Assembly: GCA_000388065.2 (NCBI GenBank)
Contig: KB932206.1
DNA from: Fonticula alba ATCC 38817
Lineage: Eukaryota; Protista; Nucleariida
Direction: 5' to 3' (one strand)
Length of the DNA stretch: 54,802 nt
In this document: positions 6,823-54,219 of the stretch, piece after piece
Layout of the letters: the number at the start of each line of letters is the position of its first letter
How positions within the stretch are numbered: position 1 is the stretch's first letter
The notes under the pieces: model-generated
Database searches by the model: none
Told to the model about the DNA's origin: nothing
The model's input: only the letters and a program-made list of their open reading frames with translations
Translations under genes and position numbers: made by a program

Positions 6823-7300
6823 CTAGATCCAGTGGCGAGTTGGCAAGTCAGGGAAAGCGTGAGCGANNNNNNNNNNNNNNNNNNNNNNNNNNNNNNNNNN
6901 NNNNNNNNNNNNNNNNNNNNNNNNNNNNNNNNNNNNNNNNNNNNNNNGGAGCGAAAGGGGCACGTGTGGGTGTGGGCGCTGTGCTAGCAGGGGCGGGGGA
7001 GTCCGACGGCCGGGGCTGGATGACCGGGTGAAGGAAAAGCAAGCCCCGATGCCGCTTTTGAAATTTAGTCGACATGATCGCGCCCCAGGCCAACTTCCAA
7101 TGCTTGGTCGGGGGAGCGTTGCGATCGGCCGAGATGGTGGTCGGTCGTCGGGGCCTTCGGGCGCCACAGTGGCCCACGGCTAAGGTCTTCCTCCCAGCCG
7201 GACAGCCATCCTCCTCCATTTCATTTTTTCTCCCTCCCTCTCTCTCTCTCTCTCTGTCCCCCCTCTTCCCCTCTTAAGGGCCTCTCTCTCCCTTTGCGCG

Positions 7301-14406: not shown

Positions 14407-15950
14407 GTCTGCATCAGAGTGCGTGTTGCTTTCGTGCATGTATCTAAGAGCATGTATACGTGTGTGTGTGTGTGTGTGTATACGCGCGTGACTGAAGGCC
14501 GGGGAGCATGGGAGCAGAGGCAGCTGCATGGACGCGAGCCCCCACATGTGGCCCCTGGCATGGGCCGAGTGATAAAACGCCCACCGCAGGTGCCGCAAAC
14601 CGGTTGAGAGGCCTCCGCGCGAAAGTGCACGAAGCCGACTGGTGCCCCGTCTTGCCCCTGCGCGGCGGGCCGAAGGCGCGCCCCGCGAGACGAAGCGCGT
14701 GCCCGGAAACGCCAAGCCCCCGCCCGCCCGGCCTGTGTGCATGTGTGTCTGTGTGTGTGCGCACATACCCGGGGATGGTGAGGACAGTCTTCCCAGGCCG
14801 GCTGCGGCAACGGGTTCCACCTGGGGAGGGACCCCGCCCCGACAACCCTCTCACTTGTGGAATGTGATATCCCTCTAACATGCACCCGTCAAGCTCCGCT
14901 TCGGAGAATGGCAGCCACTCAAGGCTGGAAAGGGACGCCCGTCTCGCCGCGGGCCGAAAAAAAAAGGGGGCCGATGAGCCCAGCACTCATCAGGAACCCC
15001 CCACAGCCAGACTTGACACCCGGCCTGGCTGGGGCCAAGCACACGAGGGGTGCCAGTTCTCACAGACCAATGGCCGCACCTGCCTGCCGAGGTCCGGGGC
15101 CACGGGCGGGGCCGGCAGAGGACGGCGCAAATAGAGACGAAGTTGCTCTCGGGGGCGGCCCTTGGCTGGCGGCCGCATTGGCTCAGGCCCTTTCCTTCCC
15201 GCCCCCCCCTCCGCCCCCTCCCCCCACACTCCTCCCATATGCTCCGCCGGGCCACCGCAAGGGGAAATTGCTCGCGGCCCCGGTTGCCGAAACTGACGAA
15301 TCGGGCCTCTCTGCCCGGATGTCCTCGGGTGTCTCAGTCGCATGGGTCCCCTCGGCTTGGTTTGAAGGTCCTCTGGCACCCCCCCCCCCCGTCCCCGCCG
15401 CCGGGTCCCCTCCTTTACCTCCGATCGTGTCCCGGCCTCGCCGCGTCCCCGGCGTTTCTCTTCGCCTTCGCCCCCCTCCACGGGGCGTCGCCATCTGACA
15501 GGGCATATGATTGTGGGACCGAGAGGAAAACAGGGCATGTGCCACTTCCATCCGAGAGGTCTCAAACATATCGGCCCCCACGCCGCCCCCTCCCGGAAGT
15601 CGGGCCCGCGCGAGCAGGGGTGCCGGGCCGGGGGTGGCACACCGGGGCCGCGGACGGGCACCGAAAACGCCCGGGGCCTAGCCCACGGGGCGGGGCCTCG
15701 CCCTCAATCGCGGCGGCGACCGGGCGTGATACCCGCCGGGCGTGATGCGGCATGATCGCACAGCCCCACAGTTGGCACTCCGGCCCCTTCACTTGATCGG
15801 CTCATCGGTGTCCATCCTCCCCGGGGCGCAGGGCCGCGCACCGTGGCCTTAGACATCCCTCTTCCCCCCTCCCGGCCGCCTTTCCTTCTTCGCCTTCCTC
15901 CTTCTCTCCCTCTGTCTCCTTCTCCCGCTGTCCCTGTTTTTACCTCCGCC

Positions 15951-18211
15951 ATGTGGAAGCCCGGTTCCCTGGCCCCAGACGCCCCGGAGCCCGGCAACCC
16001 CCCTCCTGCCAGTCGAGTCCCGACCACGGCCCCGCCTGTCTCGCCGGAGGTCGTCTCCCCGGACCACTCCTATGTGGTGTCGCGTTACAGTGCGTCTCTC
16101 ACGGTGGCCTGCCGTCTGCATTTCGCTGGGCACCCTGCCGCCCTCACTTCCCGCCATGCTGACATATCCCAATCGCTCCCTCGCCCAGAGACACAGCTCT
16201 TGGCTCGACTTGCCGGCCACCGAGTTGTGGCCCTCTTTGCATCCGGCCTTGAGCCGCCGCCTTGCGCGGTCGTCCGGCCGGCCGCCGGGATTCAGCGGCC
16301 AGCCCAGGCATTCGGCGGCGAGCCTGCCCCCGTCGGGCTCGGTAGCTCCGTCGGCTCGCCGCAGCTCCTATGGGCCGATGGCTTCGGCCTGGACTCTCGT
16401 GCGCCCCCTCGGCCGTCTCCGGCACTTGGCCGGTCAAACATCCCCCCGCCCCCCTCCCCCCCGTCCCTGCTCTCCACTCTCACTGACGACATCTCCTTCG
16501 CCCCCCCCCCCCCCCCCCCTCGACGTAGAGATCCCCCAGATCCTGGATGACAGCGGTTGGACCGCAAATGGGAAGGCCATTGGATATGTCGTGGTGCGTG
16601 TTTGTCTGGCCATTCCTTTGGCCTTTCCGGCCCCCGGGCTCATGCCCCTTTTGCGCATTCCAGCTGACAGCAGTGATCCACCCAGTCGACGAGTGTCGAC
16701 GCGCAGCACCTTGCCCACCGCGCGGCCATCGAGCGGGGCCGCGAACGGCCGGATTATGCCTGGGTGCGTGCTTGTGACCGGCCCCCTCCCCGGCTCCTCC
16801 CTGCTCGAGTTGCGCCTCCTGCGTCTCTGCCCACCTGGGCCCATGGCCACTGATATGCTTCACCCCTCCCCTCTTCTTGTGCATCTGCCTCTCTTCGTCA
16901 GGTTGGCTCGCTTCCCTCCAAGGATCTGCTCTTCCAGGATACGCCAGCGCGCGTAGTTTACCTCAGCGCATCGGCCATGGTGGCTGAGCTGCTGCGAGTG
17001 CGTGCTGCTATTGCTGTTGCGGTGACGATCTTCGGCATTTGATCGTCAAAAGTCCTGCCTCCTGCTTGTGCTTTACTTATGCCTGCACCCTCCCCCCCCC
17101 CCCCCCCCGCCCACACCCCGCCCTGCAGGACCCTCTGGCTTCGCGTTTCTCGGTCATCCTGGTGGATTTCGGCCACTCGCTCAGCAATGCACCCCTGGGC
17201 ATGGGGGACACAAGTCCCTTCCCCTCGACGGCCCCCCTGTCGATGGGTCTCGTGGCATCACTGCTCCGGAAGTGCGTCTCCTCCTCCATGCTTCCTTCCT
17301 GCTGACATCCGGCCCTAATCCACGATCCGTGCTTGGTTGCTTGGGGCGCCAGACTATCCAAGTCCCCGATGCGCGACGACCTTCGTCTCGTGCCAATTTT
17401 CCGCCTCGGCCAAGAGACCCTCTGCCAAGGGGCAAATCCCACGCGTCGGGAATGGACCGCTGATCAGGCCCGCCTTGACGCCGGCCTCCGTCGCCTGTCG
17501 ATCGCCATCGAGCGGTACTTCGCCCCGGCCGCCCCTTCCACTGAGGGTCCGGAGCCTGCCGCATATGCCGAGCTCCTGCTGGACAGTGGCCTCTCCTCGG
17601 GTCCAGGTACTTATGGATCTGTCCTCCTGCCGGGCCTGCCAGCACGCATATCCCTGCTCGCCAGTTGGCCTGACCCCCCCCCCCCCACCCTCCCCTCCCT
17701 CGTGACCCCAAGCCCCCCTTGTGACCGTGTCCCCGCCGGACAATGTCCTCCGGTCGGTGTGCTCGCTGAGTCCCGAGCAAGGTGCGCCAGCTGTGCTGGG
17801 CGCCTTGCGTGCTGCCGCTTCAGCGGCCCTCCTTCTATCCGAGAGCACATCGCTGCTGGAGACAGCGCTGGCTGGGGCACATCCACAAGTGTTGGCTGGT
17901 CGCCGGCGCTTCAATGTGGCCCTGGTCCAGTGTCCCTGCTCTTCGGCCATGAACACGGCAGCCGAGCGCCTTGGGCGGTTCTTTTCCTCGTACGCGCTTC
18001 CCCCGCCCTTCTCCTCCTCCTCGGCCAGCGTGGGCCCCCAAGGCCATGCTTGTCCCCCCCCACCCCCCTGACTTAATGTTCCACAGATCCACAGGCTTCG
18101 CCGATTTCAGTGTTGTGTCCACACTTGACACGGACCGGGTACGCTCCCCAGCTTGCCCTCCACCTCGCTCTCGCTCTCGCTCTCTCGCTCTCTCGCTCTC
18201 TCGCTCTCTCG

Positions 18212-18242
<31 letters not shown>

Positions 18243-20927
18243 CCCCCTCCTTCCCCACCTTTCGACCCTGACCTCTTGCTGTTCCCCTCCTGCCTACACA
18301 CACACACACACACGACTCCCACCCCAAGCGTCTGCCACGCTTTCGTAGCGGCCGGAAGCTGATCATCCTCGCGGCCGAGCCAGCCCTGGCCACCAACCCG
18401 GCCGACCCGATCCCCGTGCACCCGTCCTTCCGCCATGCTGTCATCCGGACATTGGAGGGGCTTGTTACGGCCGGCTGGCCGGCGGCCGGGCACTACCGAC
18501 GCATGGGTGCCGGGCAGCGAGCCCTGGCCCGTGTGGACCTCCTGGTGGACAGCTGTGTCTTCAGTGCGACGCTCTTTTCCCCGGGGCTCGGGCGCGATGT
18601 CACTGTCCCGTCAGTGGTATCCGGCCCCGTGGCCGGTGCCCCGACTACCACGCCAGAATGCCCCCTCCCGACGGCACACTTCCTGGCCCTGCTGCCGCTT
18701 CTCCTGTCCTTGGACTTGCGCTTGGCGGTGCTGTGTCCGCCGCTGACCCTGGACGGACTCACTCTGGTCGGCCATCCCCCGGGCACCAGTGCCGCGCTGA
18801 CCAATGCTGCTACCACACTCATCGCCATTGGTGCGCGCGACCTCGGCCGATATGCCGCGCCCCCGGTCGGTATCCACACGACCACCAGTCGCCCACTGTT
18901 GAGCGGCTGGGAGGCGGTTCGCGCGATCGAGGTACTCCCCCTCCCCCTGCCTTGACCTTCCTCCAACCGCCCGCTGACGCGTCGGCGCCTCTCTCTCTCT
19001 CTCTCTCTCCCCCCCCCCCCTTCCTTCCGGAAGAATGTGGCGGCTCTTGGCCTGGTGGACCCTCAAACGGGCCGGCCCCTGGCCACCCTCGGCGCGTCGA
19101 CTCTTCCTTCTTCCGTGGTTCGGCTTTGCACCTGGCTCTGCTGGTCACTGGGCCTGCGCGATGGTGTGGCCGATGCCGTATCGGTATGTTGCCTTCGTTT
19201 TCCGGCCTCGCCACCCTCCCGGCTGTGCAGCCGGCATGCTTCATGCCTTTCGATCGTGCATTACGTTTTCCCTGACCGACTCCCCTGCAGCTCCTGCATG
19301 CCCAGTCGACCGACGTCCTGGAGGGTGCTGCCGCCACCCTGGCCGTGCTTCGACAGGGCGGCCTTGCTGTACGTGCCCTGCTCGCTGTCCCGCTGCCTGA
19401 CATCGCCACGGGCACTTGCTAATCCCACCACCCCTGGATGCGTCCTTCGGCTCTCTAGAATTTGCTCCAGCCCGCCAGCCCCAAGGCGCAGGAGGAGCTC
19501 CTGACCGATCACGGCTGGGCCAGCGCCGAGGGCGATGCCGTCACCGCTTGGAATGGTACACTTTCGCCGCCCGGCCACTTGCCGGCTCTCCCCCATGGCG
19601 CGAAAAGGCCCTCGCCACCATGTCTAACCCCCCTTACTCCGCGCGTTCTGCGACCAGTCATCCGTGCATTCGACTTTGCCATGACCTTCCGCAATCCGGC
19701 CCTCTCCGAGTATGAGTATGCCCGATCCTGGGCCCATGACCACCGGCTGAAGCTCCCGCCCCTGCTTCAGGCATACAAGTACACCCGAGCCTTGATCACC
19801 AGCGTCCGAGCATGGTACACCCCTCTCCCCCCCCCCCCCCTCGGCCCCTTTTCTGTGTCCCCTTTCCTGACCCAAGCTGTCAGTCTGCCCGGATCGGCGG
19901 CCGATTCCCCTCTCTTCGCCGACAGCCATGCCCTCCCGGCTGACGGCCCCTCACGACTGATCCGGGCTCTGCTGGCCGGCCGGCCGCGCGCCGTCTGTGC
20001 CCTGGCTCCGGTGCCCAGCGGGCTCTATTCCCTGTCCAGTGGGGCCGCTCTGAGGCCGCATTACGGGCACTACGCCCGGGCGGCCGGGTTCGCCGGGCCC
20101 GGCGACGCGATCAGCGCCCTTTGTGCTCCTGCCTTCTCGGCGGCCGATACCCTCCGGCCGAATGAGCTCTTCACAATCCACACATCCAGTGTCCTGCACC
20201 GCTACGCCCCGAATGTTGTTCTCTACATGGATGGTGCGCCCCACGCCATGGCCCTGCATCTACCAGCTCCCGCCAGATCCCTTCCTTTACGTCGCTGCAG
20301 ACGCTGCTGCCCTGCTGCTGCCCTGCTGTTGCTCTGCTGTTGCTCTGCCCTAACCCCCTCGACTCTACTCCCAGTCGATAACTCCACACTTCCGGAAGCT
20401 CCAGCCGGCCTGCGCTTTGTCTCGGTCATCAGCCCCAAGTGGCTCCCTTCGACTGCGTACGCCCCGATGCTCTGCCTCAGGTTGCTGATTCCATGTGCCC
20501 CCCCCCCCCCCCCCCTCCCCGCCCTGCGCTCCGTCCACACTCACCATGCTCACCCACAATCCCAGCCGGACGGTTTACTCCTCTTAATTGGGCCGCACCA
20601 GGCTCACGTGTACACCAGAACCCGGTTCTACACCCGAACACATGCCAACCGCCACAGCTACCAACGCATGTACCGCATGCGCCACAAGGCCCTGGGCTGG
20701 GCGGCCGGGGCGTGCGTGCGCATGCCCCTTCCCTTCCGCTTGCCCCGCCGCCGAGGGGGGGGGGGCGGGGGCGGCCCCCCTGCGGGGCCCGTGCGGGCCC
20801 AATTCCTCGTGTCCCCTCGCTGGCCCGCTCGTCTCTTCCCCGCTTTCTCTCGCAAGTGCCCGGGGGAAGAGCCCCCGAAGGCGGCCCGGGTCGCAGATCG
20901 CCCCTTTTTCGCCAGCCCCTGCAATAG
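15951..20927 (+). CDS. DEAH/RHA helicase-like protein (DHX35-like) with degenerate ATPase motifs; probable pseudohelicase; ~15 exons
   Basis: Spliced segments are collinear with the DEAH architecture: SQIPQILDDSGWTANGKAIG, AQHLAHRAAIERG, ARVVYLSASAMVAELLR-DPLASRFSVILVDFGH, RDDLRLV, GRRRFNV, GRKLIIL, WH-like PP..ALTNAATTLIAIGARD, HA2 SAEGDAVTAWNVIRAF, WAHDHRL, IRALLAG, OB-fold TIHTSSVLH.APNVVLY and LRFVSVISPKWLPSTATRFY. Exact exon boundaries and the 3' end are less certain. Confidence 0.8.
18165..18240. repeat. (CTCTCG)n/(CT)n compound microsatellite in an intron
   Basis: Read directly. Confidence 0.9.
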
Positions 20928-21023
20928 ACTTCCCGCTTGTTCGCCACCCGTGCTCCCTCCTCCCCCTCCCCCCCCCCCCTCCTCCTTCTGCCCGTCTCCT
21001 CCCCTTTCGCACGTGCCCCCGCC

Positions 21024-22216
21024 ATGTTCTCCTTGAAATCCACCGCACCGTATGTCCTGATCTCCTCCTCCCACTTCGCCCTCTGCTCTCTCTTTTTCTC
21101 TCTCTTTCTCTCGCCTCCCTCTGTATATATCGCTTTGCTTCGTGCTTTCTCTCTCTGTCCCCCCCCCCCCCCCCTCGCCCACACACTGTCGCTCACGCGT
21201 GCACACCTTGCCCCGGCCCGCCTCCCAGCGACCCGACGAAGCTGCCGGCTGGGTTTTCTCCCACCCCTGCGTCCTGCTTGTCGGCCGCCACCGATGACCA
21301 GAAGTGGCTGCTGTCGAATGTCCTCCCGCGGGTTAACAACGGCGAGGCGGAGGTCTGGCTGATGCGTCTCCCCCGGGAGCTGGATGTCCAGCACCTGGAG
21401 GGGATCAAGCTGCGTATCGATGATGCGCCGGACGCGCCGTCCGGCCCGGCGGCCCCCCTTGGCTCGATCCAGGCCCTCCACGACGAAGAGGAGACCACGG
21501 AGGGCGACACCGCGTCGGCCGGCACCCTTGTGGATTACACCGTCACCCAGACCTCGGCTGCGGATGGCTGGGAAATTGACTCCCTGGACTTGCTTCTGCC
21601 GAAGCTGGTGGATTCGCCGTCCGGCGCGGCGGCCGACTCGTCGCTCATGTTTGTCAAGGGGATCAAGCCGACCCGGCACATTGTCATCGCTCGCCGTCCC
21701 GGGGACCAATCCAAGACTCGCGCCGATGCCGAAGGCCTCCGCCGGGACTTCCCCCACGAGGCCACCAACGCGCCGTACCTGCAGCTGGCCGATATGCACG
21801 GCAAGTTCCTGCCTGCCGGGGCCATCATCACCGAGGAGGCCATCCAGCAGCTGGCCGATGCCAAGAAGCGCCAGGCCGAGAGCAGCGCCCCTGCCACCTC
21901 CGACTGTACGTCAGTCCTCGCTCACATGGACCCGTTTGCCCGGGCCTNNNNNNNNNNNNNNNNNNNNNNNNNNNNNNNNNNNNNNNNNNNNNNNNNNNNN
22001 NNNNNNNNNNNNNNNNNNNNNNNNNNNNNNNNNNNNNNNNNNNNCCCCCCCCTGCCCCCTCTCCCAATCCTGCCTGCGCACACCCTAGCCACCGACCGCT
22101 CGGAGAAGAAGAAGCGCAAGACCGAGGACAAGTCCGAGAGCAAGAAGGACAAGTCCGAGGACAAGAAGTCCGCCAAGGCTGCCAAGAAGGCTGCCAAGGC
22201 CTCCAAGAGCAAGTAA
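21024..22216 (+). CDS. RPA34: RNA polymerase I subunit RPA34/PAF49 (A34.5)-like; exons 21024-21049, 21229-~21906, ~22089-22216
   Basis: KLPAGF...EAEVWLMRLPRELDVQHLEGIKL matches the A34.5 domain pattern (P.GF ... lWLi.aP). Lys-rich C-terminal tail EKKKRKTEDKSESKKDKSEDKKSAKAAKK. An N gap lies inside intron 2. Confidence 0.72.
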
Positions 22217-22675
22217 CCGGCCTGCACTCCCTCCTTGCCCTGCTTCCTGGCTCTCGGTCCATCGAAAAGCCGCTTCCCTTTCCTGCTGCCTCAGCGTGGG
22301 GCTCTCCTTTTTATACCCCATCTTCCCGATGGTCCTCACACAAACCCGCAAGTGCCGGTGCTCGATCTGCCTCCTGTCTCCGCCACTGCACCCGGTACAT
22401 GCTCCCCTGTCCCTGTCCGCCGCCCTGGAGGGCGTAAAAATAGAAACAAAAATCCCACGGCCTATCGTGGTAAATTCCCTCTCGGGGGGAGGGGGGGGGG
22501 GGGGGAAAACCCAAGTGCAAAGGCAAGACGAGGGGGGGTTTTCCCCACAACCCAGAGGGGGGGGGGGGGAGCAGGGCAAGGGAGGAAGGAGNNNNNNNNN
22601 NGGGGGGGGGGGGGAGCAGGGCAAGGGAGGAAGGAGAGGGGGCCGGTGCGGAAGACCCATGCGACCAGCGACAAC

Positions 22676-25589: not shown

Positions 25590-25981
25590 CGCGGGGAAAT
25601 GCAAAGAGGAAAAAGGGGGGCAAGCAGGGAGGCAGCAGTGCCGGGGGCTGCCAGACACCAACCCACCGATCGGGGGCGCTTTGGGTAGGTGCCTCCCCCG
25701 GCCGCGCCCCCCCCCCCCCCCCCCCCCCNNNNNNNNNNNNNNNNNNNNNNNNNNNNNNNNNNNNNNNNNNNNNNNNNNNNNNNNNNNNNNNNNNNNNNNN
25801 NNNNNNNNNNNNNNNNNNNNNNNNNNNNNNNNNNNNNNNNNNNNNNNNNNNNNNNNNNNNNNNNNNNNNNNNNNNNNNNNNNNNNNNNNNNNNNNNNNNN
25901 NNNNNNNNNNNNNNNNNNNNNNNNNNCGCCCCGCCCCGCCCCGCCCCGCCGCCCCGCGCCTCGCATTAATCCCCCTCCGCG

Positions 25982-41889: not shown

Positions 41890-44171
41890 GTTCTCTCCGG
41901 GCAAATACACACCTGTGTAGGAATAGGCTTCACGAGGGGATGTTGGGGGTGAATATATGTGGATGTGTGACTGAGCGCGAGTGCGGTTAGGGAGGTGCAC
42001 GCTGCGCCAAAGAAGAGAGTGGGAGGGGAAGGTGACCGTGGATGGTGCACGGCCGTCCTGGCGTCTTTTCGGCTCTGCCCGGTGGCGCGGCCGCGCCGTT
42101 CCGGGGGACCCCAGGGCCTGGGGCAGGCATGATCGAGCGGGCGCGGCCGTGCCCGGCCGATCGCGCCAATCAGTGACGGAGTTCCACCGGACTGTTCGTG
42201 ACTCGACGCCCAGGGCGTGACTACGCACATGCCACGAGACCAGCCCGGGGTGCGGGGCTGCCCAGCCTAGGCCGGGCCTCAGGCACTCGCCCCCGGGGCC
42301 GGTGGCCGTCTCACGTCCCCCCTGTGCAGGTGCCCCAAGATCGGCGTGTGACCCTCGCCGGCCTTGCNNNNNNNNNNNNNNNNNNNNNNNNNNNNNNNNN
42401 NNNNNNNNNNNNNNNNNNNNNNNNNNNNNNNNNNNNNNNNNNNNNNNNNNNNNNNNNNNNNNNNNNNNNNNNNNNNNNNNNNNNNNNNNNNNNNNNNNNN
42501 NNNNNNNNNNNNNNNNNNNNNNNNNNNNNNNNNNNNNNNNNNNNNNNNNNNNNNNNNNNNNNNNNNNNNNNNNNNNNNNNNNNNNNNNNNNNNNNNNNNN
42601 NNNNNNNNNNNNNNNNNNNNNNNNNNNNNNNNNNNNNNNNNNNNNNNNNNNNNNNNNNNNNNNNNNNNNNNNNNNNNNNNNNNNNNNNNNNNNNNNNNNN
42701 NNNNNNNNNNNNNNNNNNNNNNNNNNNNNNNNNNNNNNNNNNNNNNNNNNNNNNNNNNNNNNGGGGGCCGGCGGCACTTGTGCTGGTTCAATGAGCCAGT
42801 GTGTCGGGCTGTGCCTGAACGCCGGTGGTGCCGTGCGAGGCCCGAGGCTCGCACAGGGGTGGGGGCACTCCGCTCCGTGGAGGAAGAATGCCCCTCGTCC
42901 CGCGGTCGGTCGCCCCTGCCCGGGGGCATTCGCCCTACGCCATTCGTGGCCTAACCGTCCCTGTTCCGGCCCCCCCCCGGGGGGGGGGGGGGGCGAGGCA
43001 GAGCGCAGCAGGCGCCGGAGTAACCGGCGGCTGGGGACTTGAGCAGCAGCTGCCTGCTCCAACATTCTCCCGCCAGAGACTGGCCGTGTGCAACCGGGTC
43101 GCATGCAAGCATGGACACACCCGGGCGCCCGGGGGGTGTCCGGGCGAGAGGTCGGGAACAGCCGATCGTGCATGGGATTCCGGCGAGACGATCGGCAGCT
43201 TCAGCACGACCAGCGTGGCATCGCGCGCGCTCTGTCGACCGGCGAGACGCGGGGGCGCATGCGGGTGTCCCCGCCCTCGCCGGCCCTTGCGTGCGACCAT
43301 GGGGCCGATTGGCGCTGGGTGCTGTGCAATTTGCCGAGGGCATGGGGAATTCGCATTCCGCCCGGGGCGCGGGCCTTCCAGCGCGAGGGGCGCGCGCGCG
43401 CGCGCGCGCGCACACACACATGCACTCCACGCTCGTGCGCACGAGCGGACTCGGCGGGCATCGCGACTCTCAAATACTCGGGGCGAGGGGGGGGGAGACG
43501 CCTACCGTGGTATGGGTCCCGACATTGCCGCGGAAGGGGGCCGGGCAGGCCCCCAGCTTTTGTTTGTTGTGTGTTCCCCCGTGCCGTGCCCCCCCCCCCC
43601 CGAGCCCCGAACGGGGCTTCCATGGAGGGGGTCACTGGTCCCAGGCGAGACCCGTTTCCCGGCCCCTCCCGCTCTGCCCTGCCTGCGTGTCGATGCTCGG
43701 CCGCAGGCTGGTATCTTCTCCGGCCGAGCGATCGACATTCCCCAGCCCATCTCTCCCGCCGAACCCGCTCTCGGACGATCTTCTCTCGTCACAGATGACC
43801 CGCACCCAACATTGCAGGCCTCCTTTCCTCCCGGGTCCCGCCCGCCCCCCTCCCTCCTGACCCCCGCGGCCGACCTCTCGCTCGGCCTTTCGCCTGCGCC
43901 TTTTCACGACCGCCGCACAAGTCATCCCGCCAACCGTCGGAAGGCCGAACTTCGCGCCTCATTTCGGCCCCCGCACTGTGGTCGCTGCAAGTGCCTGCAC
44001 CATTCGATTCCCCTTCCCTCCTCCCATTTCCTGTTTTTCCCCCCCCCCCCCCCCCCGCCTTCCCGTTTGCCTGCTCCCTTCCCGTTTCGTTCCCCTTCCT
44101 CGGCTTCCTCCTCCTCCTCCTCCTCCTCCCTTCCGCGCATCTTCCCTCTTTCCCCGCCTGTCGCCGTCGCC

Positions 44172-50100: not shown

Positions 50101-52957
50101 GTCGGAGGCGAGTCAGAATGCCCCGGCCTCGGATGCTGCCCCGATGCCGGCCGCCCGGCCGGCTCCCCTGATGATCGGCTCCATGTCGGCCTCCAGCCTG
50201 TCCTGCCTGCAGCGCATTCAGCGCGGCGATGAGCTGGCCGCGGCGGTCGATGCCGAGGTTGTCCGATCCGCGGTCACCGGCACCGGGCCGAGTGCCCCCG
50301 AGCGCGGGCTCTTCCGGCTGTTTGCCATTTTCCTCACACAGTGCCAGCGACATGTGGACCGCGGTACGTGCCTTGCCTGGTGGCCGCCGATGCGGGCCCT
50401 TGGTCGTGCGATGGTCCGAGCCTCATCATTGTGTCCCCTACTGACCCTCTCTCTCCCTTGCCGGGTCCCGGCCCTTGCCCCTCCCCCTGTGGTCCGTGCC
50501 GCCAGCTGCCCCGGCCTTTCAAATTCGCCGGTCGAGCGGCCTCTCCACGCGCCTGGCCTCCCTTGGTGGACGGACNNNNNNNNNNNNNNNNNNNNNNNNN
50601 NNNNNNNNNNNNNNNNNNNNNNNNNNNNNNNNNNNNNNNNNNNNNNNNNNNNNNNNNNNNNNNNNNNNNNNNNNNNNNNNNNNNNNNNNNNNNNNNNNNN
50701 NNNNNNNNNNNNNNNNNNNNNNNNNNNNNNNNNNNNNNNNNNNNNNNNNNNNNNNNNNNNNNNNNNNNNNNNNNNNNNNNNNNNNNNNNNNNNNNNNNNN
50801 NNNNNNNNNNNNNNNNNNNNNNNNNNNNNNNNNNNNNNNNNNNNNNNNNNNNNNNNNNNNNNNNNNNNNNNNNNNNNNNNNNNNNNNNNNNNNNNNNNNN
50901 NNNNNNNNNNNNNNNNNNNNNNNNNNNNNNNNNNNNNNNNNNNNNNNNNNNNNNNNNNNNNNNNNNNNNNNNNNNNNNNNNNNNNNNNNNNNNNNNNNNN
51001 NNNNNNNNNNNNNNNNNNNNNNNNNNNNNNNNNNNNNNNNNNNNNNNNNNNNNNNNNNNNNNNNNNNNNNNNNNNNNNNNNNNNNNNNNNNNNNNNNNNN
51101 NNNNNNNNNNNNNNNNNNNNNNNNNNNNNNNNNNNNNNNNNNNNNNNNNNCCTTTGCGAAGAGACTCATCCAATCTTTGTCTTCCCCCCCCCCCCCCCGG
51201 CGGGGCAGGCATGGCCCCCGGGTCGCTTCGGGCTCCGGGAGTCCTTCTCCCAACCGGACCTTCAGGATGCCGGGGCGCCGGACACCTTGAGCTCTGGCTC
51301 GGCCATCCGGCCGCCGACCCTGGCCCATGCTCGTGCTGACCAGCCCGACTGCTTGGCGGCCTTCCTGACGCTACTGGCTCCGGAGGGCGATCATTCGAAC
51401 CGGGCCCGGCCGATTGTGGCCCAATTGCCGAAAACCCGGTCCGGGATGCCCCGGCGTGCGCCCTCCTCCGGGAGTCTGGCCGGGCCGGTGGATTTGGCCC
51501 CCGGCTCGCCGGGCGAGGCCCTCACTGCGTCCATGTTGTCCACCTCGCCGGCGGGCGGTGGCAGCTCCACCGGGCCGGCGCCCATGTCGCCCGGCGGCAT
51601 CATTGCCGATGGTCCCGGCGGAGGCGTCGAGCCCTCCTCCGGGTCCAGCGCTCCGGTGCAACAGCTGAACGCCCTGCCGCCGCTGCCCCTGGGGCTGGTG
51701 CGCCATGTGCTGGATTCGGCCCTGTCCATTGATGAGCGCCTGATTGGCCTGCTGCTGTCCCCGCACTCGGCTCGCCTGCTGGAGGGCGAGCGCTTGGCCC
51801 GCCTGCTGGATGTCGGCGGCCCGCTGGCCGGCCAGCCCCCGGGACCGGCCCCCACCCGGCCTCTGTCCATCCTGCTCTTTGAGGATCTCCTCGCGAGCCA
51901 GCTTTCCTCCAGTGGCTCCGGCCGATCGGCCTCCAGCGTGTCGCTCACCGCCACGATGGGCCTCTCCTCGCCGGCCCCGCGCCTGGGTTCCGGGGGGGGA
52001 TCCGGCTCGACGGGCTCGCTCAAGCAATTGCCCGCCCTGAGCAGCTCCAGCAGCAGTGGGTTCCTGGTGAACTCCAGCAGTGGGACCCTGCGCCGACAGG
52101 CCGGCGGTGCCCCGACCTCCGGCCTGACCCTCTATGCGCTGGCGGTGGACATGCTGGCCGCCGGGCCGGGCAGCATGGCCGGCGCGACACCGGGCGGGCC
52201 TGACCCGGCGGCAAGCCCCGTGCTTGAGGCCTATCGCGGGCTGCTGCTGGGCGAGCACTCCAGCGAGAATGTGGACTTCTGGCTGGCGGTCATTGCCTTC
52301 GACCTGGACCCCACCCTGGAGAAGATGAGTCGGATCTGCTCGCACTTCATCCTGCCGGCCGCCAGCCAGGAGGTCAACCTGTCGCTGCCCTGCCGCCGGG
52401 CCACCCTGGACATGTGCCTGCTGGCGACGGACATCGCCCGGTCGGAGTACTATTTCCGCCTGGTTGGCGGGGCCAATGGCGGGTCGCAGGACTGGGGCAT
52501 CACCTCGCGCGAGGATGCTGCTCACTATTCCCAGGCTCTGGCCCGCATGGTGGCCGAGGCGGAATCCGCCTCCAGTCGCGAGGTGTCGCCCCACTTGCCG
52601 GCTGTGGGTGAGGCCGCCGGACCGCTGGCAGCCCCGGCCACCGAGTCCGGGGGCTTCATGCGTGTTCGCTCGCGCAGCCGCAGTGCCAGCAGCTCCTCGG
52701 CCGATGGGGCCCCCGGCGCCGCGGCATTGGCCGAAGCGGCGGCCTCCCGGCGGACCTTCGCCTGGCGCCCCGAGGGCATGACCGACCAGTCTCCCTATTG
52801 GCGCTTGGTTTTGAGCGATGTCCCTGCCTCCATGCCCATGCCGCGTGGGCTCTTCTCCGATGCCCAGTCGGAAACCCTGCGACTGATGGTTGGCGACAGC
52901 TTCCCCCGGTTCCTGAATGCACTGGCCGGATCGCGGCACAATCGCCGCTCGGGCTAG
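44172..52957 (+). CDS. Large Ser/Pro/Gly-rich protein with DH (RhoGEF) and split PH domains and a C-terminal RGS domain; internal gap 50576-51150
   Basis: DH: RSQAIHDLFLLELEYARL; VGAALVDH|LRSIHQTYATHI..GAFVAPLE; LDQVLMLPLQYLSRLVVLVG|EIAHHTPKAHADHSPLRSVLSKLELLTASMQ. PH-like strands: RPVRLTLYNDGLLL, MEAFIPLRHLSV. RGS: YRGLLLGEHSSENVDFWLAV..ICSHFILPAASQEVNL...LFSDAQSETLRLMVGDSFPRFL. Confidence 0.85.
50576..51150. other. Assembly gap (575 N) inside the RhoGEF-RGS gene. Other gaps: 6867-6947, 21948-22043, 22592-22601, 25729-25926, 42368-42761, 53957-54219
   Basis: Runs of n. Several abut poly-C/G or simple repeats. Confidence 0.99.
51151..51185 (+). repeat. 35-nt exact duplicate of 54768-54802 (cctttgcgaagagactcatccaatctttgtcttcc)
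   Basis: Direct comparison. One copy starts exactly at a gap edge and the other ends the window. Confidence 0.95.
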
Positions 52958-53843: not shown

Positions 53844-54219
53844 CGGGCGGGCCACGCTTGGCGGGGGCCCGGACCCGGGCCCGGGAGAGCGGGACGGGCG
53901 GGGTGGGGGGGGAAGGGGGCGCCGGCCCGCGGTCCAGGACGCGCCGTCAGCAACGGNNNNNNNNNNNNNNNNNNNNNNNNNNNNNNNNNNNNNNNNNNNN
54001 NNNNNNNNNNNNNNNNNNNNNNNNNNNNNNNNNNNNNNNNNNNNNNNNNNNNNNNNNNNNNNNNNNNNNNNNNNNNNNNNNNNNNNNNNNNNNNNNNNNN
54101 NNNNNNNNNNNNNNNNNNNNNNNNNNNNNNNNNNNNNNNNNNNNNNNNNNNNNNNNNNNNNNNNNNNNNNNNNNNNNNNNNNNNNNNNNNNNNNNNNNNN
54201 NNNNNNNNNNNNNNNNNNN

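What the first reader, a model, noticed from the sequence alone, without database searches (positions are those of the whole stretch)
15951..20927. Full-length but catalytically dead DEAH-box helicase (DHX35-like pseudohelicase)
Seen in sequence: about 15 exons splice with normal GT-AG sites into a protein with the whole RecA1-RecA2-WH-HA2-OB layout, yet every ATPase motif is destroyed. Walker A GxGK(S/T) reads GFGLDS (16380-16398, joined over intron 16399-16528 to QIPQILDDSGWTANGKAIG). Motif Ia QPRRVAA is unrecognisable, motif II DEAH reads DFGH (17165-17176), motif III SAT is absent after RDDLRLV, and motif VI QRAGRAGR reads RRMGAGQR (~18497-18520). Established knowledge: these residues are needed for ATP binding, hydrolysis and coupling. 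From memory, QIPQxLxxxGWTAxG, RxDLRL, GDxxTxxNV and WL...A..FY are closest to DHX35, a spliceosome-associated helicase partnered by GPATCH1 and absent from S. cerevisiae. Inference: an open frame with no stop across ~5 kb argues for a selected pseudoenzyme (G-patch sink, RNA clamp or spliceosome scaffold) rather than a pseudogene, and probably arose independently of vertebrate DHX32/DQX1. No single ORF in the track reveals it.
Basis: partly seen in the sequence, partly recalled or inferred. Interest (0 to 1): 0.85.

Follow-up and report, generated by a model that had tools for sequence, protein, structure and literature searches.

The report
Dead DHX35 helicase gene in Fonticula
The amoeba Fonticula alba carries an intact, transcribed and correctly spliced descendant of the spliceosome proofreading helicase DHX35 that keeps the helicase fold but has lost the residues needed to bind and burn ATP, so if it still works, it works without its motor.

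Summary
Window 15951-20587 (+) is a 17-exon, 950-aa gene, identical to Fonticula alba H696_03715, which NCBI annotates as a hypothetical protein.

- **Expression:** RNA contigs confirm 10 of its 16 GT-AG introns by joints or bridging contigs, plus an eleventh on an 8-letter overhang. They include the junction that creates GFGLDS|QIPQ.
- **Descent from DHX35:** PDB sequence hits and Foldseek both rank DHX35 chains first. A profile of metagenomic DHX35 orthologues scores 71.7 bits, against 3.4 for the best of 3000 shuffles. A small tree places the protein on the DHX35 side (95/94). It also keeps the DHX35 N-terminal (F)WKPG start.
- **Fold:** two models align over about 550-650 residues with DEAH/RHA helicases.
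- **Lost motifs:** motif I reads GFGLDS, Ia VVSTSVDA, Ib SASAMVAE and II DFGHSL. SAT is absent and no QRxGRxGR exists.

The frame has no internal stop where 12-18 are expected, despite a branch about 12 times the family median. This argues for retention as a folded, non-catalytic protein. No sister sequence exists to measure selection. Whether an intact DHX35 or GPATCH1 exists in this genome could not be tested.

The parts
15951..20587 (+). Whole coding region of Fonticula alba H696_03715 (17 exons, 950 aa, TAA at 20585-20587)
   Evidence: Hand model equals P0001; called gene range in KB932206.1
15951..16089 (+). Exon 1. Starts MWKPG (15951-15965), matching the (F)W[KR]PG start of DHX35 orthologues
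   Evidence: intron 1 (16090-16188) not covered by RNA
16189..16398 (+). Exon 2. Pre-motif-I helix/strand (SYVVSRYKTQLLARLAGHRVVALF), a 44-aa insertion (16239-16370) and the degenerate Walker A WADGFGLDS (16371-16397)
   Evidence: joint 16398>16529 in RNA contig X2
16529..16593 (+). Exon 3. (Q)IPQILDDSGWTANGKAIGYVV, the best conserved DHX35-like stretch
   Evidence: RNA joints on both sides
16686..16763 (+). Exon 4. STSVDAQHLAHRAAIERG...; motif Ia TQPRRVAA is replaced by VVSTSVDA (spans 16588-16703)
16902..16997 (+). Exon 5. Motif Ib position LSASAMVAE (16962-16988) in place of LTDGxLLRE
   Evidence: X1 contig bridges 16997>17129
17129..17271 (+). Exon 6. DPLASRFSVILVDFGHSL; motif II DEAHER reads DFGHSL (17165-17182), followed by a 17-aa insertion
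   Evidence: RNA contig with 0 differences
17353..17606 (+). Exon 7. RDDLRLV strand, then no SAT (motif III position about 17462-17476, DQARL)
   Evidence: joint 17271>17353 in X1
17713..17989 (+). Exon 8. Start of RecA2 and motif IV region, not recognisable by sequence
   Evidence: no RNA coverage
18087..18138 (+). Exon 9 (17 aa)
   Evidence: no RNA coverage; intron 9 (18139-18328) holds CT/CA microsatellites
18329..18931 (+). Exon 10 (201 aa): rest of RecA2 and the WH domain.
   Evidence: no relative in 1.84 billion proteins apart from itself; RNA contigs with 0 differences
19034..19183 (+). Exon 11. WH/HA2 boundary (NVAALGLVDP aligns to LYALGALDD)
   Evidence: X2 contig bridges introns 10, 11 and 12
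19291..19368 (+). Exon 12 (HA2)
19459..19555 (+). Exon 13. HA2 motif EGDAVTAWN (19528-19554), aligning to EGDHLTLLN
19658..19814 (+). Exon 14 (HA2; AF2 pLDDT 86-95)
   Evidence: joint 19814>19884 in X1 and X2
19884..20233 (+). Exon 15. OB fold with a roughly 40-aa insertion; HTSS (20179-20190) aligns to HPSS
   Evidence: joint 20233>20375 in X1 and X2
20375..20456 (+). Exon 16. End of OB; KWLPSTA aligns to WLxExAP
   Evidence: joint 20456>20566
20566..20587 (+). Exon 17 and stop codon (RTVYSS*)

Best explanation
The locus is Fonticula alba H696_03715, a 17-exon gene descended from the spliceosomal DEAH-box helicase DHX35.

Shown: the mRNA is made and spliced as modelled. The protein keeps the RecA1-RecA2-WH-HA2-OB layout, the DHX35 N-terminal WKPG start, and about half of the positions that are nearly invariant in DHX35. 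The P-loop Lys/Thr, the Glu of DEAH, motif III, motif VI and the RNA-contacting motifs Ia and Ib are all replaced.

From established knowledge: such a protein cannot bind or hydrolyse ATP and cannot translocate on RNA.

Inferred: its sequence has diverged almost to saturation, yet the frame and all splice sites are intact, so it is kept by selection as a folded, non-catalytic protein. The most likely role is a protein-binding adaptor or scaffold that uses the surviving RecA1 core, the HA2/OB domains and the N-terminal motif. It may still pair with a G-patch partner on spliceosomes, behaving like a permanent DHX35 K83A that binds but does not remodel. ATP-driven disassembly would then fall to another helicase such as DHX15/Prp43.
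For: Gene and transcript:
- The model equals the public protein.
- 10 of 16 introns are confirmed by RNA joints or bridging contigs, an eleventh (intron 13) only by an 8-letter overhang, and the motif regions show no differences.

DHX35 descent:
- phmmer against PDB ranks C. thermophilum, human and S. pombe DHX35 first (40.8, 38.6 and 21.7 bits). DHX16, Prp22 and Prp2 score 17.9 bits or less.
- A DHX35 profile scores 71.7 bits in two colinear domains: RecA1 aa 111-213 and HA2/OB aa 690-948. The best of 3000 shuffles scores 3.4.
- The tree puts it on the DHX35 side of the split from DHX16-like sequences, with support 95/94.
- Foldseek's top two hits are DHX35 chains.
- MWKPG aligns with the FW[KR]PG start of the orthologues.

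Fold:
- The ESM Atlas model of this exact sequence (pTM 0.66) has only DEAH/RHA neighbours, with 613-648 residues aligned over aa 20-950.
- The AF2+MSA model gives VIA Z 21-25 over 540-590 residues.

Dead motifs. K83A literature: PMC13736545.

Selection on frame and fold:
- 0 internal stops against 14 and 15 in the other frames, and a minimum of 4 in 2000 shuffles.
- 71 of 154 columns that are at least 90% conserved in DHX35 are kept, but by my own count from the lists only about 11 of 39 in the catalytic and RNA motifs.
- The terminal branch is 9.5 substitutions per site, against a median of 0.77.
Against: - No orthologue from a sister species exists, so dN/dS was not measured and selection is inferred from frame integrity alone.
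- GC3 is 0.74, against 0.84-0.85 in two neighbouring genes. Lysine is only 1.2%. The protein carries about 250 residues of Ala/Pro/Gly/Ser-rich insertions. All of these also fit relaxed constraint.
- RecA2 and WH have no significant sequence signal and low AF2 confidence.
- The AF2 model was built on a DHX35 alignment, so its DHX35 ranking is not independent.
- RNA depth is low (3-5) and five introns have no coverage.
- No protein-level evidence exists, and the partner (GPATCH1) was not looked for.
- The tree lacks Prp43, Prp22 and Prp16 representatives.
Confidence: 0.6

Rival explanations
1. Transcribed relic. The gene lost its function when DHX35 activity became dispensable in this lineage. 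It is drifting under weak or no constraint, and the open frame survives only because the sequence is GC-rich and the loss is not old enough.
For: - Extreme branch length.
- Loss of RNA-binding as well as ATPase motifs.
- Weaker codon bias than neighbouring genes, lysine depletion and low-complexity insertions.
- Low RNA depth.
Against: - At this divergence a neutral sequence of this composition should carry 12-18 in-frame stops. It has none, and the other frames carry 14 and 15.
- All 16 introns keep GT-AG, branch points and phase, and those covered by RNA are removed.
- Conserved non-catalytic positions are kept about twice as often as catalytic ones, by my count from the lists. Uniform decay does not predict this.
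- The terminal WKPG motif is kept.
Confidence: 0.25
2. Dead paralogue. Fonticula also has a normal DHX35 elsewhere in its genome. H696_03715 is a duplicate freed from catalysis, as DHX32 and DQX1 are among vertebrate DEAH proteins (from memory).
For: Nothing direct. The placement inside the DHX35 group is unresolved (open fork), so orthologue and paralogue cannot be told apart. Pseudoenzymes commonly arise by duplication (general knowledge).
Against: No second DEAH-like gene lies in the 54.8-kb window. The whole genome could not be searched with the tools left, so this is untested rather than contradicted. It is compatible with the main reading, changing only 'sole copy' to 'extra copy'.
Confidence: 0.3
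3. Still an enzyme. The protein binds a nucleotide or moves on RNA using unconventional residues.
For: D209 and H212 of motif II, G111 and G113 of the P-loop, and T460/N461 of motif V survive.
Against: - The P-loop Lys is Leu, the following Thr/Ser is Asp, and the Glu of DEAH is Phe.
- No arginine-finger motif is present in either register.
- The single K83A change is reported to abolish ATP binding and helicase activity in human DHX35 (PMC13736545).
Confidence: 0.03

Closest known systems
DHX35 (human DHX35, C. thermophilum and S. pombe orthologues; partner GPATCH1)
   Same: - Best sequence and Foldseek matches.
- Same domain order.
- N-terminal (F)W[KR]PG start.
- QIPQxLxxxGWTAxG helix, DPLxSxxSVIxxD strand and RxDLRL strand.
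- EGDxxTxxN in HA2, and HxSS and WL...A in the OB/C-terminus.
   Different: - All ATPase motifs and the RNA motifs Ia and Ib are replaced.
- About 250 extra residues in insertions.
- Scores 40 bits to solved DHX35, where a normal orthologue scores 700-754.
- Terminal branch about 12 times the family median.
- Among 83 metagenomic DHX35-type genes, 80 read DEAHER.
Human DHX35 K83A (engineered P-loop mutant)
   Same: It lacks the P-loop lysine. The mutant still forms a complex with GPATCH1 and joins the debranched-intron spliceosome, but cannot release it (PMC13736545). This is the behaviour I propose as a model for the natural protein.
   Different: The mutant carries one substitution in an otherwise intact helicase. 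The Fonticula protein has lost every motor motif and much of the RNA channel, and its binding to GPATCH1 or to spliceosomes is untested.
Vertebrate DHX32 and DQX1 (DEAH-family members with degenerate motifs; from memory)
   Same: DEAH/RHA-fold proteins with non-canonical catalytic motifs. A DHX32 cluster is among the language-model neighbours (rank 10).
   Different: They are vertebrate paralogues that coexist with an intact DHX35. The Fonticula protein carries DHX35-specific marks and sits in Holomycota. Their relationship was not tested here.
Other pseudohelicases: Utp25 (PMC9539457) and the C-terminal cassette of Brr2 (from memory)
   Same: A helicase fold kept for a structural or regulatory role without ATPase activity.
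   Different: They belong to different superfamily-2 families (DEAD-box, Ski2-like) and have documented functions. Here the function is inferred only.
S. cerevisiae Dhr2
   Same: A DHX35-family member that left the spliceosomal proofreading role in one lineage (10.1101/2021.03.19.436190).
   Different: Dhr2 is described there as acting in nucleolar rRNA processing. The paper does not suggest it lost its motifs, and I did not examine its sequence.

Membership tests
DEAH/RHA helicase superfamily (fold) | RecA1-RecA2-WH-HA2(ratchet)-OB architecture | tested here: met
   - The ESM Atlas model has only DEAH/RHA neighbours, with 613-648 residues aligned.
- Foldseek E down to 1e-21 and probability 1.00 with more than 270 DEAH/RHA chains.
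- VIA Z 21-25 over 540-590 residues.
- Caveats: RecA2 and WH are low-confidence in AF2, and Pfam domain models do not reach threshold.
DEAH/RHA helicase superfamily (enzyme) | Motifs I (GxGKT/S), II (DEAH), III (SAT) and VI (QRxGRxGR) for ATP binding and hydrolysis | tested here: not met
   The motifs read GFGLDS and DFGH, with no SAT and no QRxGRxGR in either possible register. It is therefore not a member as an enzyme.
DEAH/RHA helicase superfamily (enzyme) | RNA-channel motifs Ia (TQPRRVAA), Ib (TDGxLLRE) and V (TNIAETS) | tested here: not met
   Ia reads VVSTSVDA and Ib reads SASAMVAE. Motif V is partly kept as ATNPAD.
DHX35 orthogroup | Closest sequence relatives are DHX35 rather than other DEAH paralogues | tested here: met
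   - PDB phmmer ranks the three DHX35 sequences first, about 20 bits ahead of the rest for two of them.
- The tree groups it with 10 DHX35 sequences against DHX16-like and one other DEAH sequence, support 95/94.
- Limits: Prp43, Prp22 and Prp16 were not in the tree, and the branch is very long.
DHX35 orthogroup | N-terminal FW[KR]PG motif at the very start of the protein | tested here: met
   MWKPG aligns with SGFWRPG, AFWKPG and SAFWKPG of the metagenomic DHX35 orthologues. L087 was verified as DHX35 by 754 bits to human DHX35. The role of the motif is unknown to me.
DHX35 orthogroup | Sole DHX35-type gene of its genome (orthologue rather than extra paralogue) | not testable with these tools
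Only the 54.8-kb window was scanned, with a negative result.
DHX35-GPATCH1 module | Binds the G-patch of GPATCH1 and docks on spliceosomes | not tested
   Presence of GPATCH1 and WDR83 in Fonticula was not examined. It needs a genome search and pull-downs.
Pseudoenzyme (selected, non-catalytic homologue) | Catalytic residues lost while the gene stays expressed and under purifying selection | tested here: inconclusive
   Loss of residues and expression are shown. Selection is supported only indirectly, by frame and splice-site integrity and by uneven retention of conserved positions. No dN/dS is possible.

The most novel reading that the evidence does not exclude
Fonticula alba has no active DHX35 at all. 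Its only DHX35 gene encodes a motor-less protein that still sits with GPATCH1 on stalled or finished spliceosomes as a passive mark or scaffold. ATP-driven discard and intron release are done by DHX15/Prp43 alone. Together with the dead RECQL4 noted earlier in this genome, this would point to repeated conversion of helicase motors into adaptors in this lineage.
Probability: 0.2. Interest if true: 0.7.

Novelty: new variant of a known kind. Interest (0 to 1): 0.45.

Why it matters
DHX35-GPATCH1 was recently shown to reject spliceosomes on faulty 5' splice sites and to eject the debranched intron at the end of splicing. Both steps depend on its ATPase (PMC11958768, PMC13736545).

A lineage that keeps the protein but not the motor is a natural separation-of-function allele. 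It asks which DHX35 roles are structural, such as recruitment, occupancy of the U2/branch-site position or partner binding, and which need translocation. It also asks how an intron-rich organism with loose 5' splice sites manages without that motor.

The value is limited. The organism has no genetic tools that I know of, the protein is unstudied, and the existence of a second, intact copy is not excluded.

Tried and rejected
- **Pfam on ten single exons:** nothing. On the whole protein only OB_NTP_bind appears, at E = 0.27.
- **phmmer of parts against PDB:** exon 10 alone and aa 684-950 alone gave nothing.
- **The search for related loci in genome contigs:** this collection is prokaryote-only, so the scan was wasted. 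In metagenome contigs, no relative was found.
- **Three homologous-protein searches** (whole protein, region 100-260, region 106-218 at E up to 10): each returned only the protein itself. No DHX35 ids were obtained that way, and no search was left for a Fonticula paralogue or for GPATCH1.
- **Exhaustive HMMER with exon 10:** only itself among 1.84 billion proteins.
- **AF2 without an alignment:** pLDDT 36, unusable.
- **hmmalign and hhalign for RecA2/WH:** no significant alignment (E = 0.15). The motif IV-VI register therefore rests on agreement between methods, not on significance.
- **Runs X10 and X11 (another organism):** they matched only the poly-C tracts and say nothing.
- **Rejected reading of an alternative terminal exon ending at 20927:** the RNA joint 20456>20566 and the public model end the protein at 20587.
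- **Rejected RRMGAGQR as the positional motif VI:** see the observation check.

Full report
**The gene**

Reading the three forward frames of 15900-21000 and joining them at GT-AG sites gives 17 exons and 2853 coding bases. The product is a 950-aa protein that starts at ATG 15951 and ends at TAA 20585-20587. Donors are GTGCGT, GTACGC or GTATGT types. Most introns carry CTGAC or CTAAC branch points and C-rich tracts.

An exhaustive HMMER search with the largest exon (aa 439-639) found exactly one protein among 1.84 billion. It is 950 aa long and identical to my model. It is Fonticula alba H696_03715 (XP_009495845.1), annotated 'hypothetical protein'. The called gene on KB932206.1 has the same limits. 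Its neighbours are unrelated: a UQ_con E2, a WW protein, TAF6 and a UFM1 ligase. No paper in the library mentions the accession.

**Transcription and splicing**

Two small 2012 runs of the same organism hold spliced contigs.
- Joints or bridging contigs confirm introns 2, 3, 5, 6, 10, 11, 12, 14, 15 and 16.
- An 8-letter overhang fits intron 13.
- Introns 1, 4, 7, 8 and 9 have no coverage.
- The contigs cover GFGLDS|QIPQ, DFGH and RRMGAGQR with zero differences.

No alternative junction or editing therefore restores the motifs. Depth is low (3-5).

**More than chance**

The genome is 65-70% GC, so long open frames are common. One example is a 524-codon open stretch in another frame at 19462-21036.

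Even so, the spliced frame has no internal stop. The two other frames have 14 and 15, and 2000 shuffles never gave fewer than 4, with means of 12-18. Codon periodicity is present (GC1/2/3 = 0.70/0.56/0.74). GC3 is lower than in two neighbouring genes (0.84-0.85), and lysine is only 1.2%.

**Family**

The whole protein hits PDB only through aa 109-215. The top three hits are DHX35 proteins: C. thermophilum 9l5s_z (6e-10), human 9s2f_35 (3e-9) and S. pombe C20H4.09 (4e-4). DHX16, Prp22 and Prp2 come well behind.

To obtain real DHX35 sequences I scanned metagenome contigs for the peptide QIPQ[YF]LxxAGW. I extracted uninterrupted ORFs and exon pieces from the matches. One of them, L087, scores 754 bits to human DHX35.
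- A profile of nine such proteins scores 71.7 bits on P0001, against 3.4 for the best of 3000 shuffles. It matches in two colinear domains: RecA1 (aa 111-213, 50.9 bits) and HA2/OB (aa 690-948, 17.1 bits).
- The orthologues begin with FW[KR]PG, and the Fonticula protein begins with MWKPG.
- A maximum-likelihood tree puts it on the DHX35 side of the split from DHX16-like sequences (95/94). Its terminal branch is 9.5 substitutions per site, against a median of 0.77. The tree lacks Prp43, Prp22 and Prp16, so this is supportive rather than final.

**Fold**

- The ESM Atlas holds a model of this exact sequence (pTM 0.66). Its structural neighbours are all DEAH/RHA helicases, with 613-648 residues aligned across aa 20-950.
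- AF2 without an alignment failed.
- With 54 DHX35 rows it gave pLDDT 63.6. Confidence is high in the RecA1 core, HA2 and OB, and low in RecA2 and WH.
- Foldseek ranks two DHX35 chains first (E = 1e-21).
- VIA-align gives Z 21-25 with every DEAH/RHA helicase over 540-590 residues.
- The AF2 ranking leans on its DHX35 alignment. The Atlas result does not.

**Motifs**

| Motif | DHX35 consensus | Fonticula |
|---|---|---|
| I | GETGxGK(S/T)T | ADGFGLDS (K114L) |
| Ia | TQPRRVAA | VVSTSVDA |
| Ib | LTDGxLLRE | LSASAMVAE |
| II | DEAHER | DFGHSL |
| III | SAT | absent |
| V | TNIAE | TNPAD |
| VI | QRAGRAGR | no equivalent |

MAFFT, hhalign and the AF2 hairpin agree that LLVDSC (aa 509-514) is the YVIDxGF strand, which places motif VI at aa 536-550. 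RRMGAGQR (aa 495-502) is then in an insertion. The RecA2 alignment is not significant on its own, so I rate this as probable.

Among 83 metagenomic DHX35-type genes, 80 read DEAHER and all read GxGK(S/T)T. The Fonticula state is therefore an outlier. Overall 71 of 154 columns that are at least 90% conserved are retained. By my own count from those lists, only about 11 of 39 in the motor and RNA motifs are.

**Meaning**

Human DHX35 K83A is reported to lose ATP binding and helicase activity. It still binds GPATCH1 and still joins the debranched-intron spliceosome, which it can no longer release (PMC13736545). In C. thermophilum, DHX35 holds the U2 branch-site strand in its RecA channel (PMC11958768).

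The Fonticula protein lacks both the motor and much of that channel. It cannot be a helicase and is a poor candidate for an RNA clamp. An intact frame across saturating divergence argues that a folded protein is still required. I therefore favour a protein-binding adaptor role (0.6) over a drifting relic (0.25).

Whether a second, intact DHX35 or a GPATCH1 exists in this genome could not be tested.

I did not check it. If it holds, it suggests a lineage-wide tendency.

Noticed in passing
L075:3771-6686 (-), metagenome contig JACKZZ010007693.1: An AT-rich (35% GC), Asn/Ser-rich DHX35-type ORF of 972 aa. It starts MSAFWKPG and keeps GCGKST and QRADRAGR. Motif II reads DQVDER (E to Q, H to D), Ia reads QPTRISA, Ib reads TYE and III reads GTT. 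It may be a second, partial and independent loss of DHX35 catalytic residues, in a different organism. Its branch is also long (2.2).
   Followed up: partly
L041 and L112 (metagenome loci): Two DHX35-type fragments read DEVHVR at motif II. This resembles the S. pombe orthologue, whose aligned motif reads DEVHE.
   Followed up: no
window 16501-16519, 17092-17108, 17674-17686, 19009-19020, 19827-19840, 20498-20515: Poly-C tracts of 12-19 bases lie inside six introns of this gene. They attract reads from unrelated RNA runs (X10, X11) and create false long-range 'joints' between 16520, 19820 and 20497. The two T>C differences, at 19824 and 20516, lie at the edges of such tracts.
   Followed up: yes
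window 18152-18322 (intron 9): The longest intron (190 nt) is filled with CTCTCGCT, CT and CA microsatellites. It has no RNA coverage, so its borders rest on the gene model only.
   Followed up: no
window 19462-21036 (+) and 20439-20927 (+): Long stop-free stretches occur in non-coding frames and beyond the true stop. They are a by-product of the GC-rich, A-poor composition. Open frames alone are weak evidence in this genome.
   Followed up: yes
window 6867-6947, 21948-22044, 22592-22601, 25729-25926, 42368-42762, 50576-51150, 53957-54219: Runs of N (assembly gaps or masked stretches) are present. None touches the gene studied. The one at 21948-22044 lies between it and TAF6.
   Followed up: no
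window 15951-20587, intron donors: 5' splice sites vary at positions +4 to +6: GTGCGT, GTGCGC, GTACGC, GTACGT, GTACAC, GTACTT, GTACTC and GTATGT. In Cryptococcus and mouse, DHX35-GPATCH1 is reported to police weak positions 4-6 (PMC11958768). Whether loose 5' splice sites and a dead DHX35 are linked in Fonticula is open.
   Followed up: no
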